Positions 6,912 through 11,434 of a stretch of DNA of 64,000 nt are shown here, piece after piece. Position 1 is the stretch's first letter; every line of letters starts with the position of its first letter. The translations under genes were made by a program, and so were the position numbers. Under the pieces are notes generated by a model. It saw nothing but the letters and a program-made list of their open reading frames with translations. It made no database searches and had not been told where the DNA came from. This DNA comes from Oikopleura dioica (Eukaryota > Animalia > Chordata). The stretch lies in assembly GCA_907165135.1 (NCBI GenBank), contig OU015568.1, positions 10,912,001 through 10,976,000 on the forward strand, written 5' to 3'.

Positions 6912-7192
6912 TCTATATAATGAGCGTTGAAGTAAGCATTCGAAAAAATAGAATTATTAAGAACATTTTTTAGGTCCATGGAGTTTACAGAATTGCAGAG
7001 TCAGAATTGGGTGATTTCGATTCGGGATTTTTGGATTTCTTATCTTTTGGCAAAATTTTGTCCTTCCATCCTTTGAGCTTTGCTTTTGGAGAAAAAGACT
7101 TTTGCGGATCGGACGGGGTGTGAGGAGTACTGTGAACTGGATGCTGTATTCTTCTGAATATTTTTGTTATCCTCTTGGCTTAGAAAAAATTA

Positions 7193-10100
7193 TTACTTTT
7201 CTGGTGGAAACATGGGTCTAACGGACTTTGGAGTTCGGGAGTAGCCCTCACGGGAATCCGAGCCGCTTCGGTGACTCCTTGAACCCGAACTCCTTCGAGC
7301 AGACCGGCGACCTCGGGGAATTCGCGTTGGCGTGATCATAGCTCCACTTTCTGACGCGGCTTTCGACGGTTTTCTGAAAACATAATCAGATATTGAAAAC
7401 ATAGAAGGCTCCTTACTTTGATTTACTGGGAGAAACGATTGGAAGAGACCCAGTACTGAAGGCTGGAGCTGGTTTCTTTGGACTACGCTGAACTGGTGGA
7501 TCGAAATAAGGCGGATCTATCGGAGAAATGACATCGCCAGTACGAGATTCGGAGTTTTTAGGCATTCCAAGTTCTGCTAACTCGTCGAGATCGATCGAAG
7601 ACCCGTCTTCTAAAACGAAACTTAAGAAATAAAATAATAAAATCATTACCATTTGAATCAACAAGGCTTGTGTTGCTCGAGGTTCTGGAATGTCCTTGAT
7701 GTGGCGTGTCCTCTACCATCGGAAAAACCTTCACTTGGTCGGTGTTTTCGATTACTGCGTTGCTTAGTGGGATATTGCCCGGCTGAGATTGCATGGGCGG
7801 TTGAAAGAAAAGTGCAGGAGGCGCTGATGTTTCTTCCTTGACAGGCGGAGTTTGGCTGCTCATTACGTTGTTCGTTATTTTCATAGAGTTCATGTCCCTG
7901 GTGACTCCTGAAAGACCGCTTTCGATGGTTATATTGGAGAACGAAGTCCTAGTCGAGAGATTTGCAGGAGTTCCCTCTATAAGAAAAGTTAGAAATTGAA
8001 GAAAAATGTGGTCAAACCTGTATTGAAGGCTTTGGGGGCGTCGTCCATACAGGATGATCCAACGGCTGCGTACATAAATGGCGGAGCAGAATTCACAGAT
8101 GTTGGGGCACTGGTGAAAATCGGCGGAGTCTGATGCGACGAAGATCCTGTGTCTGTGGATGGGCGCACTCCAGAAGACACTGGTTCATTTTGCGAGATTA
8201 CAGCCGGTGCTTCGTTCACTTTCTTATCGATGTATTTTATGACGTCGATATTGGGATCGAGTGTTGAACGAGTTTTTGCCGATTGCTTCATTTTTGGCTT
8301 GTTTTTCTTCGGCGCTCCGAGACTGTACAGATCTTTCATAAAACTATCTTCTTCATATTCTTCGTCGCCAGAACCTTCTTCTCGATCAATGACTGTATTG
8401 TCGTGATGATCCCAGAAGCTTTTTCTCCATCTAGAGTTTCATCGTGCTCCCGTAGAGGCTGCTCTTTAGATTTGGCGGAGCCCTTGCTGATTTCCGATTT
8501 GGAATCAATTGTCAAATCAGACAGTTTTGAGCGCGGAGACATTGATCCTTCGTCATTGAATGCTACAGGGCCGTCATCCATATCAGCGCTTCCAAAATTT
8601 GCGGTTGGAAAAGGAAACGGTTGATAAGACATGTTTTGTTGCGGATAAGACATATTCGTGTTGTAAAATGGCTGCTGTGAAGGTTGCGAAACGGCGAATG
8701 GAATGGGCTGACTTGATTGCGGCTGCGCAGAATTGGGAAACATGGGTTGTGAAGTTGGTGCGGGGAATGTATTCGTCTTTGGAGCCTGCGAGTGTGAAGG
8801 GAAAGTGTTTTGAGATAGGGGCATCGGTGCTGGATTTGCATACAATGGAGGCTTTGATATTGTCGGAGGGTAAAGAGGCTTGCCAAACGATGGTGGTGGG
8901 TTTTGAGAGTTCGCGGACTCGGCCCGTGCTGCTTGTTCGCGTTCAAGGTTGATCCTCTCGATGTGCTGGCCAGGAGAGTCTGGAATATCAGAAGGACTAA
9001 CTTGGCCAGACGCTAATCTTGAGCCCGGCTCAGAATCAGATGCGTTCGCTGGCATTTCAACTGATTCAATTGAACTTGCTGAAGCTGGAGAATGTCGAGA
9101 GAACATGAGCGGAGTGTCTTGACAATACGCTGGCGTTCTTGCTCCAGATTGCAGACCTGAAGCCATCCCGGAAGTGTAGCCAGACACCATTCCAGATTGT
9201 GTAGTTGAACTTTTCCCAGACATTTTCTTATCATCCTTCGGCGTTGCATGCGATTCTAGTGTCGGTGAACGTCGTAATTTTGGAGAAATACTTGCCCCGT
9301 GATTTGGCGTATTTTCAACGTTGTAAACTTTCGGCTGGTCTTGATTGATTTTAGTGTAGTCGAAAGGCGAGTCCGCTTTATCAGATTCGGTTGGGCGGGG
9401 ATACAACGGATTTTTAGGCAGATCGGTGTAGATTGGCTGATAAGAAGGGAAGGGATTTTGCTTTTGGTTGCTTTGTTGCGTAAAATCATAAGGTCGATCG
9501 TGATCATCAGAGTAATAATTTGGCGCATTCGTTGGATGGATGTGCTGCTGATGGTGCGCTTTCATCGTTTGCGGAGCGTACGGCGCGTGCTGCATGCTAT
9601 TTGGCGGATTTGCCATTTTCCACTGGAAGCCAACATCGTTTGGAGCTTTCTTTGACTCAAGCTTGTGGTACACATCGCTTGCTTCTGCCACAATCTGCTG
9701 ATTCGAATGGTTCAAGAGTTGTCGCAAATAGAGGTCTCTTCTGTCTTTTATCAAAATTTCTGCGCCACGCTCAGATGTTACTAGAATCTTGAAGATTCTT
9801 AGACAGTGCCTGACTGTCGTATCGGAACCCTTTGTTAGTTTGAGGAGCGTTTGAACACAAGGCTCTAGAATTCCTGGATCGACGTGTCTTTGGGGGACGC
9901 AGTTGGCAAGAATACCCGTGAGTCCTTCTGAATCGTTCGATGGTGCGTCCAGAGAAGCAACGATGCTCTGAAGAAAGCCAATATCGCTTGAAAGAGATGA
10001 TGCAACTGTAGCTGAAGCAGAGGCAGTCCATAGAGCAAAAGAGAGCGCTTCTTTGACGTTTCTTCTTCCAGTTGACCTTCTTGCTTCCTTCAAAGCATGG

Positions 10101-11053
10101 GCGAGGGAGAGAGGAAGACCAGGAGCTCCAGAAAAGTGCGTATTCTTAACAAAAGTCGAAATTAGAACGAGAAGTTGATGCTCTGGCTCAACGGGTTTGA
10201 TTTTCTGAGAAATGACATCAGCCAGATGCGATAAGAGAGCACTAGAAGACGAGACGTAGGTTTTCGTATCGGAGCAGCCGACCATTAGATTCGTGAGGAT
10301 TGTGAGCGAGGATATAAAAAGCTGCTTGGAAAAGGAATAAGCTGAGCAAGTGGCGCCAGGAGCGATGAGAAATAGAAGACATCCGAGAGTTCCAATATCA
10401 GCTTTTAAAAGATTCGAAAAAATTGTTGTTATATTTTTATTATAAAATGAGTCAAAAGGCTTTTTCGAGCCATTCCTAAAAGTGGCCCAAAGCCAGCAGA
10501 ACGCATCGCGTCTCTTCCTTCTTTCGTTGAACTAAGAGACTGCAGTTGAGTGAACATCGGCGGCAGACTCCCCTGTATGTACGAGTCTGGAATCTGCTTG
10601 ATCAAGTAGCCATTGAAAAGCTCTTGCTGAAAGTAGCGTAGCTGGAGCAGCACTTCAGCGAGCTTCGGAGAAGGAGGTCGAAGATCGAGGAGAAGTTTCG
10701 CAAATTGGTCGCGTTCCCGTTTTTCAGCATGGCGATCATCTTGCGTTTTGTTCGTGTGGCAGTTGATTCCTGAAAAATTGTAACTAACCGTAATTTTTTG
10801 TAAAAGCAAATATGCAAAAAGTGCTCTAGAAAAAAGGAAACGCGGGGTATTTACCTGTAATAGAAATTCTTGTCGTGGCTCGTATTGCAAGGAGCTTATC
10901 GATCCCAAAAGACGCAAGAATCTCCTTCGATCCTGGCAATCCCAAACATTCCTGTAGAATCGGAGTGAAATGACCAGTCTTGTGAAGAATTTGAGGGTCC
11001 ATCATCGGCATGAACCGGAGAAGAATGTCGAAACGAGTATCCAGATTCTCCAT
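7193..11053 (-). CDS. APC: Adenomatous polyposis coli-like protein (Armadillo repeats, 15-aa and 20-aa repeats, SAMP-like motifs)
   Basis: Arm repeats (LTILTNLMVGCSDTK, LSFALW, TGILANC, CVQTLL). 15-aa-like DRPYDFT and DSPFDYT. 20-aa repeats YCQDTPLMFSRHS and spliced FNTEGTPANLSTRTSFSNITIES (human YCVEGTPINFSTATSLSDLTIES). SGQVSPSDIPDSPGQ (human SGIISPSDLPDSPGQ). A frame switch near 8420 is needed. Confidence 0.88.
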
Positions 11054-11362: not shown

Positions 11363-11434
11363 GGCTCGTTGGTCTAGGGGTATGATACTCGCTTAGGGTG
11401 CGAGTGGTCCCGGGTTCAAATCCCGGACGAGCCC
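11363..11434 (+). tRNA. tRNA-Pro(AGG)
   Basis: GGCTCGTTGGTCTAGGGGTATGATACTCGCTTAGGGTGCGAGTGGTCCCGGGTTCAAATCCCGGACGAGCCC; cloverleaf, anticodon AGG, nearly identical to metazoan tRNA-Pro. Confidence 0.98.

What the first reader, a model, noticed from the sequence alone, without database searches (positions are those of the whole stretch)
7193..11053. Divergent APC orthologue with intact beta-catenin-binding repeats but eroded Axin-binding SAMP motifs
Seen: Arm repeats, 15-aa-like repeats and 20-aa repeats (e.g. FNTEGTPANLSTRTSFSNITIES, VEDTPHQGHSRTSSNTSL). At SAMP-like positions it has EEDSFMKDLYSLGAPKKNKP (~8310-8355) and SIDLDELAELGMPKN (~7555-7600), against human SEDDLLQECISSAMPKKKKP. Known: SAMP repeats bind the Axin RGS domain and 20-aa repeats bind beta-catenin. 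From memory (needs verifying), O. dioica was described as having a simplified destruction complex. Inference: this may be an overlooked APC acting in a rewired or Axin-independent Wnt destruction complex.
Basis: partly seen in the sequence, partly recalled or inferred. Interest (0 to 1): 0.8.

Follow-up and report, generated by a model that had tools for sequence, protein, structure and literature searches.

The report
Compact, divergent APC gene of Oikopleura
This is a real but unusually small and fast-evolving version of the tumour-suppressor gene APC in a tunicate; it was already in GenBank as "similar to adenomatous polyposis", a 2021 paper listed it as absent, and its Axin-binding motifs are altered but still conserved rather than decayed.

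Summary

**Gene model.** The gene has 7 exons and 6 introns and runs from 11053 to 6985, giving 1247 aa.

**APC identity is firm.**
- The 20R2+CID block matches human APC (PDB 1TH1_C) at E=2.8e-8.
- The correctly spliced fourth 20-aa repeat scores 35 bits on Pfam APC_r (cut-off 19.9).
- A confident AlphaFold model of the Arm region has human APC-ARM as its top 23 structural matches.
- All non-appendicularian profile hits that carry a significant Pfam domain are APCs.

**Not new.** GenBank AAL56422.1 / UniProt Q8WS39 is named "similar to adenomatous polyposis [Oikopleura dioica]". Martí-Solans et al. 2021 nevertheless list APC and Axin as "Absent".

**SAMP motifs.** The two SAMP-like sites get no Pfam SAMP hit. 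They are the two best-scoring positions in the protein under a PSSM built from other animals' SAMPs. They keep the hydrophobic register and sit after 20-aa repeats. They are conserved between lineages whose synonymous sites are saturated.

**Interpretation.** They are diverged, not decayed. An Axin-independent complex is not supported. Whether Axin exists could not be tested here; two unchecked scan notes report a divergent Axin elsewhere in this genome.

The parts
10855..11053 (-). Exon 1 (aa 1-66), ATG at 11053. The conserved N-terminal region contains PILQECLGLPGSK at 10963-10925.
   Evidence: 95.5% aa identity to L001. In-frame stop just upstream of the ATG.
10770..10854 (-). Intron 1, 85 nt, GT-AG.
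   Evidence: the homologous 42-nt GT-AG intron is present in L001.
10476..10769 (-). Exon 2 (aa 67-164): the pre-Arm and first Arm part.
   Evidence: 81.6% aa identity to L001.
10402..10475 (-). Intron 2, 74 nt, non-canonical (GA-AG as modelled). There is no GT in the interval. The exact donor is not verified.
   Evidence: conservation with L001 and L002 stops at TTAG|, the reading frame changes, and an acceptor AG sits before CTGAT in all three sequences.
8018..10401 (-). Exon 3 (aa 165-959). It holds most of the Arm domain, two 15R-like motifs, 20R-a, 20R2+CID, a P/Q-rich linker, the 20R3-like repeat, SAMP-like 1 and the first half of 20R4.
9638..10401 (-). Arm-repeat domain, exon-3 part (aa 165-419).
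   Evidence: AlphaFold2 model with pLDDT 84 and pTM 0.80. The top 23 Foldseek PDB hits are human APC-ARM, TM about 0.71. hhalign against the Arm region of APC P0031 gives E=1.6e-4 over 207 collinear columns.
9467..9508 (-). 15R-like motif 1 (DDHDRPYDFTQQ).
   Evidence: matches the x-P-x-[DNE]-[YFW]-[ST] pattern shared with Pfam-positive 15R repeats of other APCs. No Pfam APC_15aa hit.
9338..9382 (-). 15R-like motif 2 (DKADSPFDYTKINQD).
   Evidence: Conserved in L001 and L003.
9251..9319 (-). Degenerate first 20-aa repeat (VENTPNHG...).
   Evidence: Pattern match only.
8966..9121 (-). 20R2 (QDTPLMFSRHSPASASSIES) plus sequence B/CID (SEPGSRLASGQVSPSDIPDSPGQ).
   Evidence: phmmer against PDB 1TH1_C (human APC), E=2.8e-8. 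96.6% identical to L001. This is the region matched in all non-appendicularian APC hits.
8501..8578 (-). 20R3-like repeat (DDGPVAFNDEGSMSPRSKLSDLTIDS).
   Evidence: Conserved in L001, L003 and L006.
8418..8423 (-). Frameshift site. The window has an A5 run where the orthologues have one more base and read GEKSFWDHH straight through.
   Evidence: The downstream frame still encodes FWDHHDNTVID identically. No reads covered the site.
8295..8354 (-). SAMP-like motif 1 (EEDSFMKDLYSLGAPKKNKP; core FMKDLYSLGAP at 8342-8310).
   Evidence: PSSM rank 2 of the whole protein at 5.4 bits; the L001 copy scores 10.8. Intermediates ILAGLMNSGLNSIP (L006) and ILAGLYDEGLNSIP (L003) were found. No Pfam SAMP hit.
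8205..8261 (-). Conserved box after SAMP-like 1 (LDPNIDVIKYIDKKVNEAP).
   Evidence: Present in L003, L006 and APC P0023.
7977..8017 (-). Intron 3, 41 nt, GT-AG. It splits 20R4.
   Evidence: Retaining it in public models lowers the APC_r score below the cut-off.
7650..7976 (-). Exon 4 (aa 960-1068): the second half of 20R4, a linker, and the last 20R.
7918..8045 (-). 20R4 (DDAPKAFNTEGTPANLSTRTSFSNITIES), spanning intron 3.
   Evidence: Pfam APC_r 35.2 bits, E=9.6e-9, cut-off 19.9. The orthologue P0037 scores 30.8 bits.
7654..7716 (-). Last 20-aa repeat (VEDTPHQGHSRTSSNTSLVDS).
   Evidence: 92.9% identity to L001. Conserved in L003.
7610..7649 (-). Intron 4, 40 nt, GT-AG.
7417..7609 (-). Exon 5 (aa 1069-1132).
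7554..7601 (-). SAMP-like motif 2 (SSIDLDELAELGMPKN; core at 7595-7560). It follows the last 20R after five residues, much as human SAMP3 directly follows 20R7.
   Evidence: PSSM rank 1 at 10.6 bits, above the 99th percentile of shuffle maxima. Identical in L001. L003 has SEIDLDQLAEFGLPDS. No Pfam SAMP hit.
7374..7416 (-). Intron 5, 43 nt, GT-AG.
   Evidence: An RNA joint over this interval appears in four runs (reported as 7373|7420 with 3 unplaced letters between, reads being from a divergent lineage).
7197..7373 (-). Exon 6 (aa 1133-1192): a basic Ser/Arg-rich region with an SxIP-type motif TRIP at 7333-7304.
   Evidence: 96.7% identity by tblastx. L003 has SRIPKSSRS.
7154..7196 (-). Intron 6, 43 nt, GT-AG.
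   Evidence: An RNA joint over this interval (reported as 7152|7196, 1 nt from the GT-AG model) appears in three runs, with 11, 5 and 3 reads. L001 has the homologous intron.
6985..7153 (-). Exon 7 (aa 1192-1247, ending ...SDSAIL) plus the stop at 6987-6985.
   Evidence: Substitutions fall with 3-base periodicity in the RNA reads. 82.5% aa identity to L001, and the stop is conserved. The JGI spliced model P0037 ends the same way.

Best explanation
The locus encodes the single, compact (1247 aa) and fast-evolving orthologue of APC in an Oikopleura dioica-complex genome.

It keeps the APC modules in the canonical order and in miniature:
- an APC-type Arm domain
- two 15R-like motifs
- about five 20-aa repeats, including the non-beta-catenin-binding 20R2 followed by sequence B/CID
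- two SAMP-derived helices, each placed after a 20-aa repeat
- a basic C-terminus with an SxIP-type motif

The N-terminal coiled coil and long linkers of vertebrate APC were not found.

The most likely mechanism is the ordinary one. The 15R and 20R motifs bind beta-catenin. 20R2/B regulates the APC:Axin cycle. The two SAMP-derived motifs (consensus hydrophobic-hydrophobic-x-x-L-[YA]-x-[LA]-G-x-P-K) dock on the RGS domain of a similarly divergent Axin.

Shown here: orthology, gene structure, transcription of the orthologue in another lineage, and purifying selection on each motif island. [quoted passage not shown]

The frameshift in the A5 run is most simply a homopolymer assembly error.
For: - **Sequence:** phmmer against PDB hits human APC 1TH1_C at E=2.8e-8 over 20R2+CID.
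- **Pfam:** APC_r scores 35.2 bits on the spliced 20R4 and 30.8 bits on the orthologue P0037.
- **Profile search:** in a search of 1.84 billion proteins, eight of the ten longest non-appendicularian hits scanned carry APC_r above Pfam's cut-off (one scores just below it, one has no APC domain), some with 15aa, SAMP or APC_rep/Arm as well.
- **Structure:** the Arm model has pLDDT 84 and its top 23 PDB matches are human APC-ARM. hhalign gives E=1.6e-4.
- **Database name:** GenBank AAL56422.1 is 'similar to adenomatous polyposis [Oikopleura dioica]'.
- **Selection:** pN=0.10 against pS=0.68 versus orthologue L001. Motif islands are 90-97% identical and linkers 51-68%. The SAMP-like 2 core is 100% identical.
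- **SAMP sites:** they are the top two PSSM scores in the protein and are in register. Intermediates ILAGLM and ILAGLY occur in two other appendicularian species.
- **Known biology of SAMP:** the hydrophobic motif, not the SAMP tetrapeptide, is critical for Axin binding. Drosophila APC2 SAMP1, which lacks a conserved tetrapeptide, still binds Axin (PMC4666143).
- **Dependence on Axin:** R2/B act through APC:Axin interactions (PMC4568445), and R2/B is the best-conserved part of this protein.
- **Transcription:** RNA reads from a sister lineage cover the exons and two splice joints.
Against: - Pfam SAMP, Arm, APC_15aa, APC_basic and EB1-binding models give no hit.
- The SAMP-like PSSM scores (5.4-10.8 bits) are far below the leave-one-out scores of genuine SAMPs (17-36 bits).
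- The conserved Cys of the hydrophobic motif is Leu in both sites. In site 2 one of the two leading hydrophobic residues is Asp.
- A published KAAS survey found no Axin in O. dioica.
- No Axin sequence could be examined here.
- The window copy carries an unexplained 1-nt frameshift.
- No binding or functional data exist.
Confidence: 0.65

Rival explanations
1. This is the reader's hypothesis of a rewired or Axin-independent destruction complex. Axin has been lost, or no longer contacts APC through SAMP:RGS. The LG[AM]P motifs would then be relics, or would bind a different partner. Beta-catenin control would rely on 20R/15R binding, R2/B, and beta-catenin-bridged or Arm-mediated contacts.
For: - Martí-Solans 2021 lists Axin as 'Absent'.
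- There is no Pfam SAMP hit, and the PSSM scores are low compared with true SAMPs.
- Cys is replaced by Leu and Ile by Tyr or Ala in the hydrophobic motif.
- Beta-catenin can bridge SAMP-less APC to AXIN1 in human cells (bioRxiv 10.1101/2025.10.17.683169).
- APC has a second, Arm-mediated Axin contact.
Against: - The same KAAS survey also called APC absent, and that is wrong. Its Axin negative is therefore weak.
- The SAMP-like sites are under strong purifying selection and keep register and position. Relics would not.
- R2/B, whose known role is to regulate APC:Axin association, is the most conserved segment.
- Two unchecked scan notes report a divergent Axin elsewhere in this genome.
Confidence: 0.15
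2. APC is kept mainly for cytoskeletal roles, such as microtubule plus-end or EB1 binding and Arm-domain partners. Its Wnt role would be reduced or vestigial.
For: - The basic C-terminus with a TRIP (SxIP-type) motif is conserved in O. dioica lineages and in L003.
- The Arm domain is well folded and APC-like.
- O. dioica has lost many Wnt ligands and antagonists (PMC8220140).
Against: - The beta-catenin- and Axin-related motifs (20R2/B, 20R3-like, 20R4, last 20R, SAMP-like 2) are as conserved as the C-terminus or more so.
- According to PMC8220140, maternal beta-catenin is functionally required in O. dioica.
Confidence: 0.12
3. The window copy is a pseudogene or null allele because of the 1-nt frameshift in exon 3. 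That would truncate the protein before SAMP-like 1.
For: The frame switches at the A5 run at 8423-8419, and a stop follows at 8339 in the original frame.
Against: - The shifted frame downstream still encodes conserved protein. FWDHHDNTVID is identical, and all later motif islands are 90-100% identical with low pN.
- All splice sites are intact.
- It is a single-base homopolymer difference, which is typical of assembly error.
- The orthologues are intact.
Confidence: 0.05

Closest known systems
GenBank AAL56422.1 / UniProt Q8WS39_OIKDI, 'similar to adenomatous polyposis [Oikopleura dioica]' (P0042, 1380 aa)
   Same: It is the same gene in another O. dioica lineage. blastp gives 75% identity over the full length, and about 82% over correctly modelled parts.
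   Different: The public model is wrong in four ways:
- It retains introns 1 and 3.
- It mis-splices the start of exon 3.
- It skips the true last exon.
- It fuses the downstream gene.

Because of this it scores only 15.9 bits on APC_r, below the cut-off. The window copy is a sister-lineage orthologue with saturated synonymous divergence.
Human APC (structures 1TH1, 3NMW, 4YJL)
   Same: - The module order is the same: Arm, 15R, 20R, SAMP interleaved with 20R, basic/EB1 tail.
- 20R2+CID is alignable at E=2.8e-8.
- The Arm fold matches at TM about 0.71.
- The last 20R is followed closely by a SAMP, as 20R7 is by SAMP3.
   Different: - It is 1247 aa against about 2843 aa (my own knowledge).
- No N-terminal coiled coil was detected.
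- It has 2 rather than 4 15R repeats, about 5 rather than 7 20R repeats, and 2 rather than 3 SAMP repeats.
- The SAMP hydrophobic motif is F-M-x-x-L-Y or (I)D-L-x-x-L-A instead of L-L-x-x-C-I.
- Arm identity is only about 19-20%.
Drosophila APC2
   Same: It is a compact APC with two SAMP repeats. In one of them (SAMP1) the SAMP tetrapeptide is not conserved, yet it still binds Axin. 20R2/B is the essential conserved core (PMC4666143; PMC4568445).
   Different: Drosophila keeps the hydrophobic motif, including Cys. An insect-like APC from the search (P0031) shows LLFQNCINLGMT and LLEQCIRDGIQ. Oikopleura has replaced Cys with Leu in both repeats.
C. elegans APR-1
   Same: It is a highly divergent, short APC relative acting with divergent Axins (my own knowledge, not checked here).
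   Different: APR-1 is reported to lack recognisable SAMP and 20R repeats. The Oikopleura protein keeps both in recognisable form.

Membership tests
APC (adenomatous polyposis coli) family | APC-type armadillo-repeat domain | tested here: met
   AlphaFold2 model with pLDDT 84 and pTM 0.80. Foldseek PDB ranks 1-23 are all human APC-ARM, with E from 4e-6 to 1e-4 and TM about 0.71; designed Arm proteins come after. hhalign against an APC Arm region gives E=1.6e-4. The Pfam Arm and APC_rep HMMs do not hit.
APC (adenomatous polyposis coli) family | 20-aa beta-catenin-binding repeats (Pfam APC_r, PF05923) | tested here: met
   The spliced 20R4 of the window scores 35.2 bits, E=9.6e-9, against a cut-off of 19.9. 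The orthologue P0037 scores 30.8 bits. Unspliced pieces score only 10-15 bits.
APC (adenomatous polyposis coli) family | 20R2 followed by sequence B / catenin inhibitory domain | tested here: met
   phmmer against PDB 1TH1_C gives E=2.8e-8, with TPLMFSR and SPSD[IL]PDSPGQ aligned. This region also retrieves other animals' APCs.
APC (adenomatous polyposis coli) family | 15-aa repeats (Pfam APC_15aa) | tested here: inconclusive
   There is no Pfam hit. Exactly two matches to the x-P-x-[DNE]-[YFW]-[ST] core lie between the Arm domain and the first 20R. Pfam-positive 15R repeats of other APCs share this core.
APC (adenomatous polyposis coli) family | SAMP repeats (Pfam SAMP, PF05924) that bind the Axin RGS domain | tested here: inconclusive
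   There is no Pfam SAMP hit at E<=10. A PSSM from 11 SAMPs of other animals ranks the two sites first and second in the protein (10.6 and 5.4 bits; shuffle 95th percentile 4.9), but genuine SAMPs score 17-36 bits. Binding was not testable.
APC (adenomatous polyposis coli) family | Basic / EB1-binding C-terminus | tested here: inconclusive
   There is no Pfam APC_basic or EB1_binding hit. The tail is basic and Ser/Arg-rich, with a T-R-I-P motif conserved as S-R-I-P in L003.
APC (adenomatous polyposis coli) family | N-terminal coiled-coil oligomerisation domain (vertebrate APC) | tested here: not met
   Exon 1 and exon 2 have no Pfam hit. This domain is not universal in the family; to my own knowledge Drosophila APC2 lacks it. 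Its absence therefore does not exclude membership.
SAMP motif ([IL]-L-x-x-C-I-x-S-A-M-P) | Hydrophobic motif at positions 1, 2, 5 and 6 | tested here: inconclusive
   Site 1 is F-M-x-x-L-Y, so all four positions are hydrophobic but none is identical. Site 2 is D-L-x-x-L-A, with Ile one residue upstream. L006 and L003 have I-L-x-x-L-[MY]. Cys is replaced in all appendicularian copies.
SAMP motif ([IL]-L-x-x-C-I-x-S-A-M-P) | Position immediately downstream of a 20-aa repeat, acidic run upstream, Lys-rich run downstream | tested here: met
   Site 2 begins 5 residues after the last 20R. Site 1 follows the 20R3-like repeat, has EEYEED upstream and is followed by PKKNKPK.
SAMP motif ([IL]-L-x-x-C-I-x-S-A-M-P) | Binds the Axin RGS groove | not testable with these tools

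The most novel reading that the evidence does not exclude
Oikopleura would run a beta-catenin destruction complex in which the canonical SAMP:RGS contact has been remodelled. Either the Cys-less L-[YA]-x-L-G-x-P helices have co-evolved with a restructured Axin RGS groove, or, if Axin is truly gone, they recruit a different scaffold. That would make this 1247-aa protein a natural 'minimal APC', defining which modules suffice in a chordate.
Probability: 0.15. Interest if true: 0.6.

Novelty: already known. Interest (0 to 1): 0.3.

Why it matters
It corrects a published gene-loss call. Martí-Solans et al. 2021 list APC as 'Absent' in O. dioica. The gene is in fact present, under selection, and transcribed in a sister lineage of the same species label.

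The analysis also suggests why automated pipelines miss it. The one strongly Pfam-recognisable repeat (20R4) is split by a 41-nt intron. The public protein model examined here (AAL56422.1) retains that intron and falls below the APC_r cut-off.

This weakens the parallel 'Axin absent' call, and with it any inference that appendicularians simplified the destruction complex.

The protein is also a naturally miniaturised chordate APC. It keeps Arm, 15R, 20R, R2/B, SAMP-like and SxIP modules in less than half the length of vertebrate APC. That could guide minimal-APC experiments and studies of SAMP/RGS co-evolution.

Tried and rejected
- **Pfam on raw ORFs and exon pieces** gave nothing significant: APC_r at E=0.85 and 0.016, with no Arm or SAMP hit. 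Only the spliced 20R4 passes.
- **PDB phmmer** did not detect the Arm domain by sequence.
- **The word-index search** found only three unnamed Oikopleura relatives.
- **RNA runs.** No listed run is shown to hold the stretch itself. The four runs I laid carry the same species label but come from a divergent lineage, with most reads under 90% identical.
  - They confirmed only introns 5 and 6 and transcription of the orthologue.
  - They did not cover the frameshift or intron 2.
  - A reported 137-nt 'skip' at 9162|9300 rests on 3 reads in one run with the middle unknown. I take it as a split alignment across a poorly conserved stretch, not an intron.
- **A 35-nt GA-AG micro-intron as the cause of the frame change** was rejected. 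The 'intron' would remove residues (KSFWDHHDNT) that stay conserved in the shifted frame.
- **The N-terminal PILQECLGLPGSK as a third SAMP** was considered. It scores -6.1 under the PSSM and lies in a conserved, probably folded region, so it is probably chance.
- **L006** lacks detectable exons downstream of 20R4.
- **Spink et al. 2000** (PMC384355) is not held in the library.
- **Axin.** I found no way to obtain an Axin query by reference, so I made no Axin search.

Full report
**Observation.**
- The region holds a minus-strand, multi-exon gene in a compact eukaryotic genome with 40-85-nt introns.
SAMP-like 1 is at 8354-8295 and SAMP-like 2 at 7601-7554. The FNTEGTP... repeat appears once a 41-nt GT-AG intron (8017-7977) is removed.

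**Gene model.**
- I aligned the window with two marine-metagenome contigs that carry the orthologue of another lineage: L001 (5081 nt) and L002. They are about 74% identical at the nucleotide level.
- The resulting model has seven exons: 11053-10855, 10769-10476, 10401-8018, 7976-7650, 7609-7417, 7373-7197 and 7153-6988, with the stop at 6987-6985.
- It has six introns of 85, 74, 41, 40, 43 and 43 nt, and encodes 1247 aa. L001 gives an intact 1250-aa protein with introns at the same positions.
  - **The TAA at 7195-7193 is intronic.** RNA reads from three bulk runs join 7152|7196 (11, 5 and 3 reads). Substitutions below 7153 fall with 3-base periodicity. The last exon and its stop are conserved. 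A JGI spliced model, P0037, ends the same way at ...SDSAIL.
  - **Intron 2 has no GT.** It is modelled as GA-AG and its donor is unverified.
  - **Exon 3 has a 1-nt frameshift at an A5 run (8423-8419).** Both relatives read GEKSFWDHH... straight through, and the shifted frame in the window still encodes the identical peptide. A homopolymer assembly error is the simplest reading. No reads covered the site.

**Identity.** Pfam on unspliced pieces is essentially blank, but five independent tests identify APC.
1. phmmer against all PDB sequences gives one hit, human APC chain 1TH1_C, at E=2.8e-8. It aligns YCQDTPLMFSR...SEPGSRLASGQVSPSDIPDSPGQ with the human 20R2 plus sequence B/CID.
2. I ran a profile of the exon-3 protein from three lineages against 1.84 billion representatives. 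It returned appendicularian fragments plus longer proteins matched on the same 20R2/CID block. Of the ten longest scanned with Pfam, eight carry APC_r above the curated cut-off, several with APC_15aa, SAMP, APC_rep, Arm or Arm_APC_u3 as well; one scores just below the cut-off and one has no APC domain.
3. The spliced fourth 20-aa repeat of the window scores 35.2 bits on APC_r (E=9.6e-9, cut-off 19.9). The correctly spliced orthologue P0037 scores 30.8 bits.
4. An AlphaFold2 model of aa 165-445, built on a 16-row appendicularian alignment, has mean pLDDT 84 and pTM 0.80. Its 23 best Foldseek matches in the PDB are all human APC-ARM structures, with TM about 0.71 and 19-20% identity. Designed Arm proteins rank below them. 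hhalign against an insect-like APC Arm region gives E=1.6e-4 over 207 collinear columns. It pairs LTNLMVGCSDTK with LTNLTFGDGNNK, and ALSFALWTASAS with LLSALWNLSAH.
5. Two 15R-like cores, RPYDFT and SPFDYT, lie exactly between the Arm domain and the first 20R.

The protein therefore does not belong to another Arm family.

**Prior knowledge.**
- A 90%-identity cluster of the relatives contains GenBank AAL56422.1 / UniProt Q8WS39_OIKDI, named 'similar to adenomatous polyposis [Oikopleura dioica]'. It also holds two unnamed partial CBY entries. The gene is therefore already annotated.
- That 1380-aa model retains introns 1 and 3, mis-splices the start of exon 3, skips the real last exon and runs into the next gene. 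It scores only 15.9 bits on APC_r, below the cut-off.
Martí-Solans et al. [quoted passage not shown]
- For APC this is a false negative. The likely causes are divergence and the intron-split 20R4, which is my inference.

**SAMP-like motifs.**
- Established knowledge, as summarised by Kunttas-Tatli et al. 2015 (PMC4666143):
  - The Axin-binding element is [IL]-L-x-x-C-I-x-S-A-M-P.
  - The upstream hydrophobic motif is the critical and better-conserved part.
  - The SAMP tetrapeptide tolerates changes.
  - Drosophila APC2 SAMP1 lacks a conserved tetrapeptide yet binds Axin.
- Among the APCs retrieved here the tetrapeptide reads SAMP, SGMP, FGMK, YGFP, VGIK, LGMT, IGMN or DGIQ. Oikopleura's LGAP and LGMP are therefore unremarkable.
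- What is unusual is the hydrophobic motif. Site 1 is F-M-x-x-L-Y. Site 2 is D-L-x-x-L-A, with Ile one residue upstream. Cys is replaced by Leu in both.
- Two other appendicularian species from metagenome contigs supply intermediates at site 1:
  - L006 has ...EDEDILAGLMNSGLNSIP.
  - L003 has ...DEILAG/LYDEGLNSIP across a verified GT-AG intron.
- At site 2, L003 has SEIDLDQLAEFGLPDS.
- A PSSM built only from 11 non-appendicularian SAMPs ranks the two sites first and second among all positions of the protein:

| Sequence scored | Site 1 (bits) | Site 2 (bits) | Shuffle maximum, 95th / 99th percentile |
|---|---|---|---|
| Window protein | 5.4 | 10.6 | 4.9 / 8.1 |
| L001 orthologue | 10.8 | 9.5 | 6.9 / 10.7 |
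| L006 site 1 | 21.4 | not found | not run |
| Genuine SAMPs, leave-one-out | 17-36 | | |

- Pfam's SAMP model finds nothing.
- Between the window and L001, synonymous sites are saturated (pS 0.68) while pN is 0.10.
- Conservation by segment:
  - 20R2+CID: 96.6%.
  - 20R3-like: 90.6%.
  - 20R4: 91.4%.
  - Last 20R: 92.9%.
  - SAMP-like 2: 91.7%, with the core identical.
  - SAMP-like 1: 77.8%.
  - Flanking linkers: 51-68%.
- My conclusion is that these are diverged SAMP derivatives under constraint, not decaying relics.

**Mechanism.**
- The best-supported reading is an ordinary destruction-complex APC in miniature.
- The segment conserved most strongly with human, R2/B, is known to act by regulating APC:Axin association (PMC4568445). 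This argues for an Axin partner.
- Whether Axin exists in this genome could not be tested. No Axin query was available by reference, and the window does not contain one. Two unchecked first-reader notes from this scan (s1-354922, s1-371379) report a highly divergent Axin on other pieces of the same genome. I use them only as leads.
- The Axin-independent hypothesis stays possible but unsupported. I give it about 0.15.
- A mainly cytoskeletal role is a weaker rival, and pseudogenisation an unlikely one.

**Verdict.**
- The APC interpretation is right but not new.
- 'Eroded SAMP' is half right.
- 'Axin-independent' is untested and disfavoured.
- The useful outcomes are a corrected gene model, a correction to a published loss call, and a well-defined SAMP/RGS co-evolution question.

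Noticed in passing
window 11363-11434 (+): A tRNA-Pro(AGG) gene lies about 300 nt upstream of the APC start, in divergent orientation. An 84-nt stretch around it is 100% identical to contig L001, while the flanks are about 74% identical.
   Followed up: partly
window 6911-6246 (-): A separate conserved gene (MLRTPSRAELASPP... / ...FYKFQYEYIAAKHG..., with at least one intron) starts only about 74 nt after the APC stop. The GenBank model AAL56422.1 fuses it to APC. The spacing suggests an operon-like pair. I did not look into its function.
   Followed up: no
window 10963-10925 (-), aa 31-43: The N-terminal PILQECLGLPGSK copies the SAMP hydrophobic motif (compare human LLQECI), including the Cys that the real SAMP-like sites lack. 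L003 has SVLQECFNLPGSH at the same place. Its PSSM score is low (-6.1), so it is probably chance inside a folded region.
   Followed up: partly
window 8261-8205 (-), aa 879-897: A conserved box, NIDVIKYIDKKVNEA, lies about 15 residues after SAMP-like 1. L006 has NIIEYIDKKMNEA and L003 has VDIMDYIEKKMNS. Another animal's APC, P0023, has HIVDYIDKLM about 100 residues after its SAMP. I know of no named APC motif that corresponds.
   Followed up: partly
window 10475-10402 (-); L001 805-875; L002 about 67-137: Intron 2 is non-canonical in all three lineages. With the boundary placed where conservation stops, it begins GA (window), TC (L001) or CC (L002). Alternative GG donors 4 nt further in are possible for L001 and L002. 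No reads resolve it.
   Followed up: partly
window 8423-8419 (-): There is a single-base homopolymer difference (A5 here, one base more in the relatives) that shifts the frame of an otherwise fully constrained gene. If it is an assembly error, similar homopolymer errors may affect other genes in this assembly.
   Followed up: partly
window 9397-9398: Sister-lineage RNA reads show a 3-nt insertion relative to the window. It lies in the poorly conserved linker before the second 15R-like motif.
   Followed up: no
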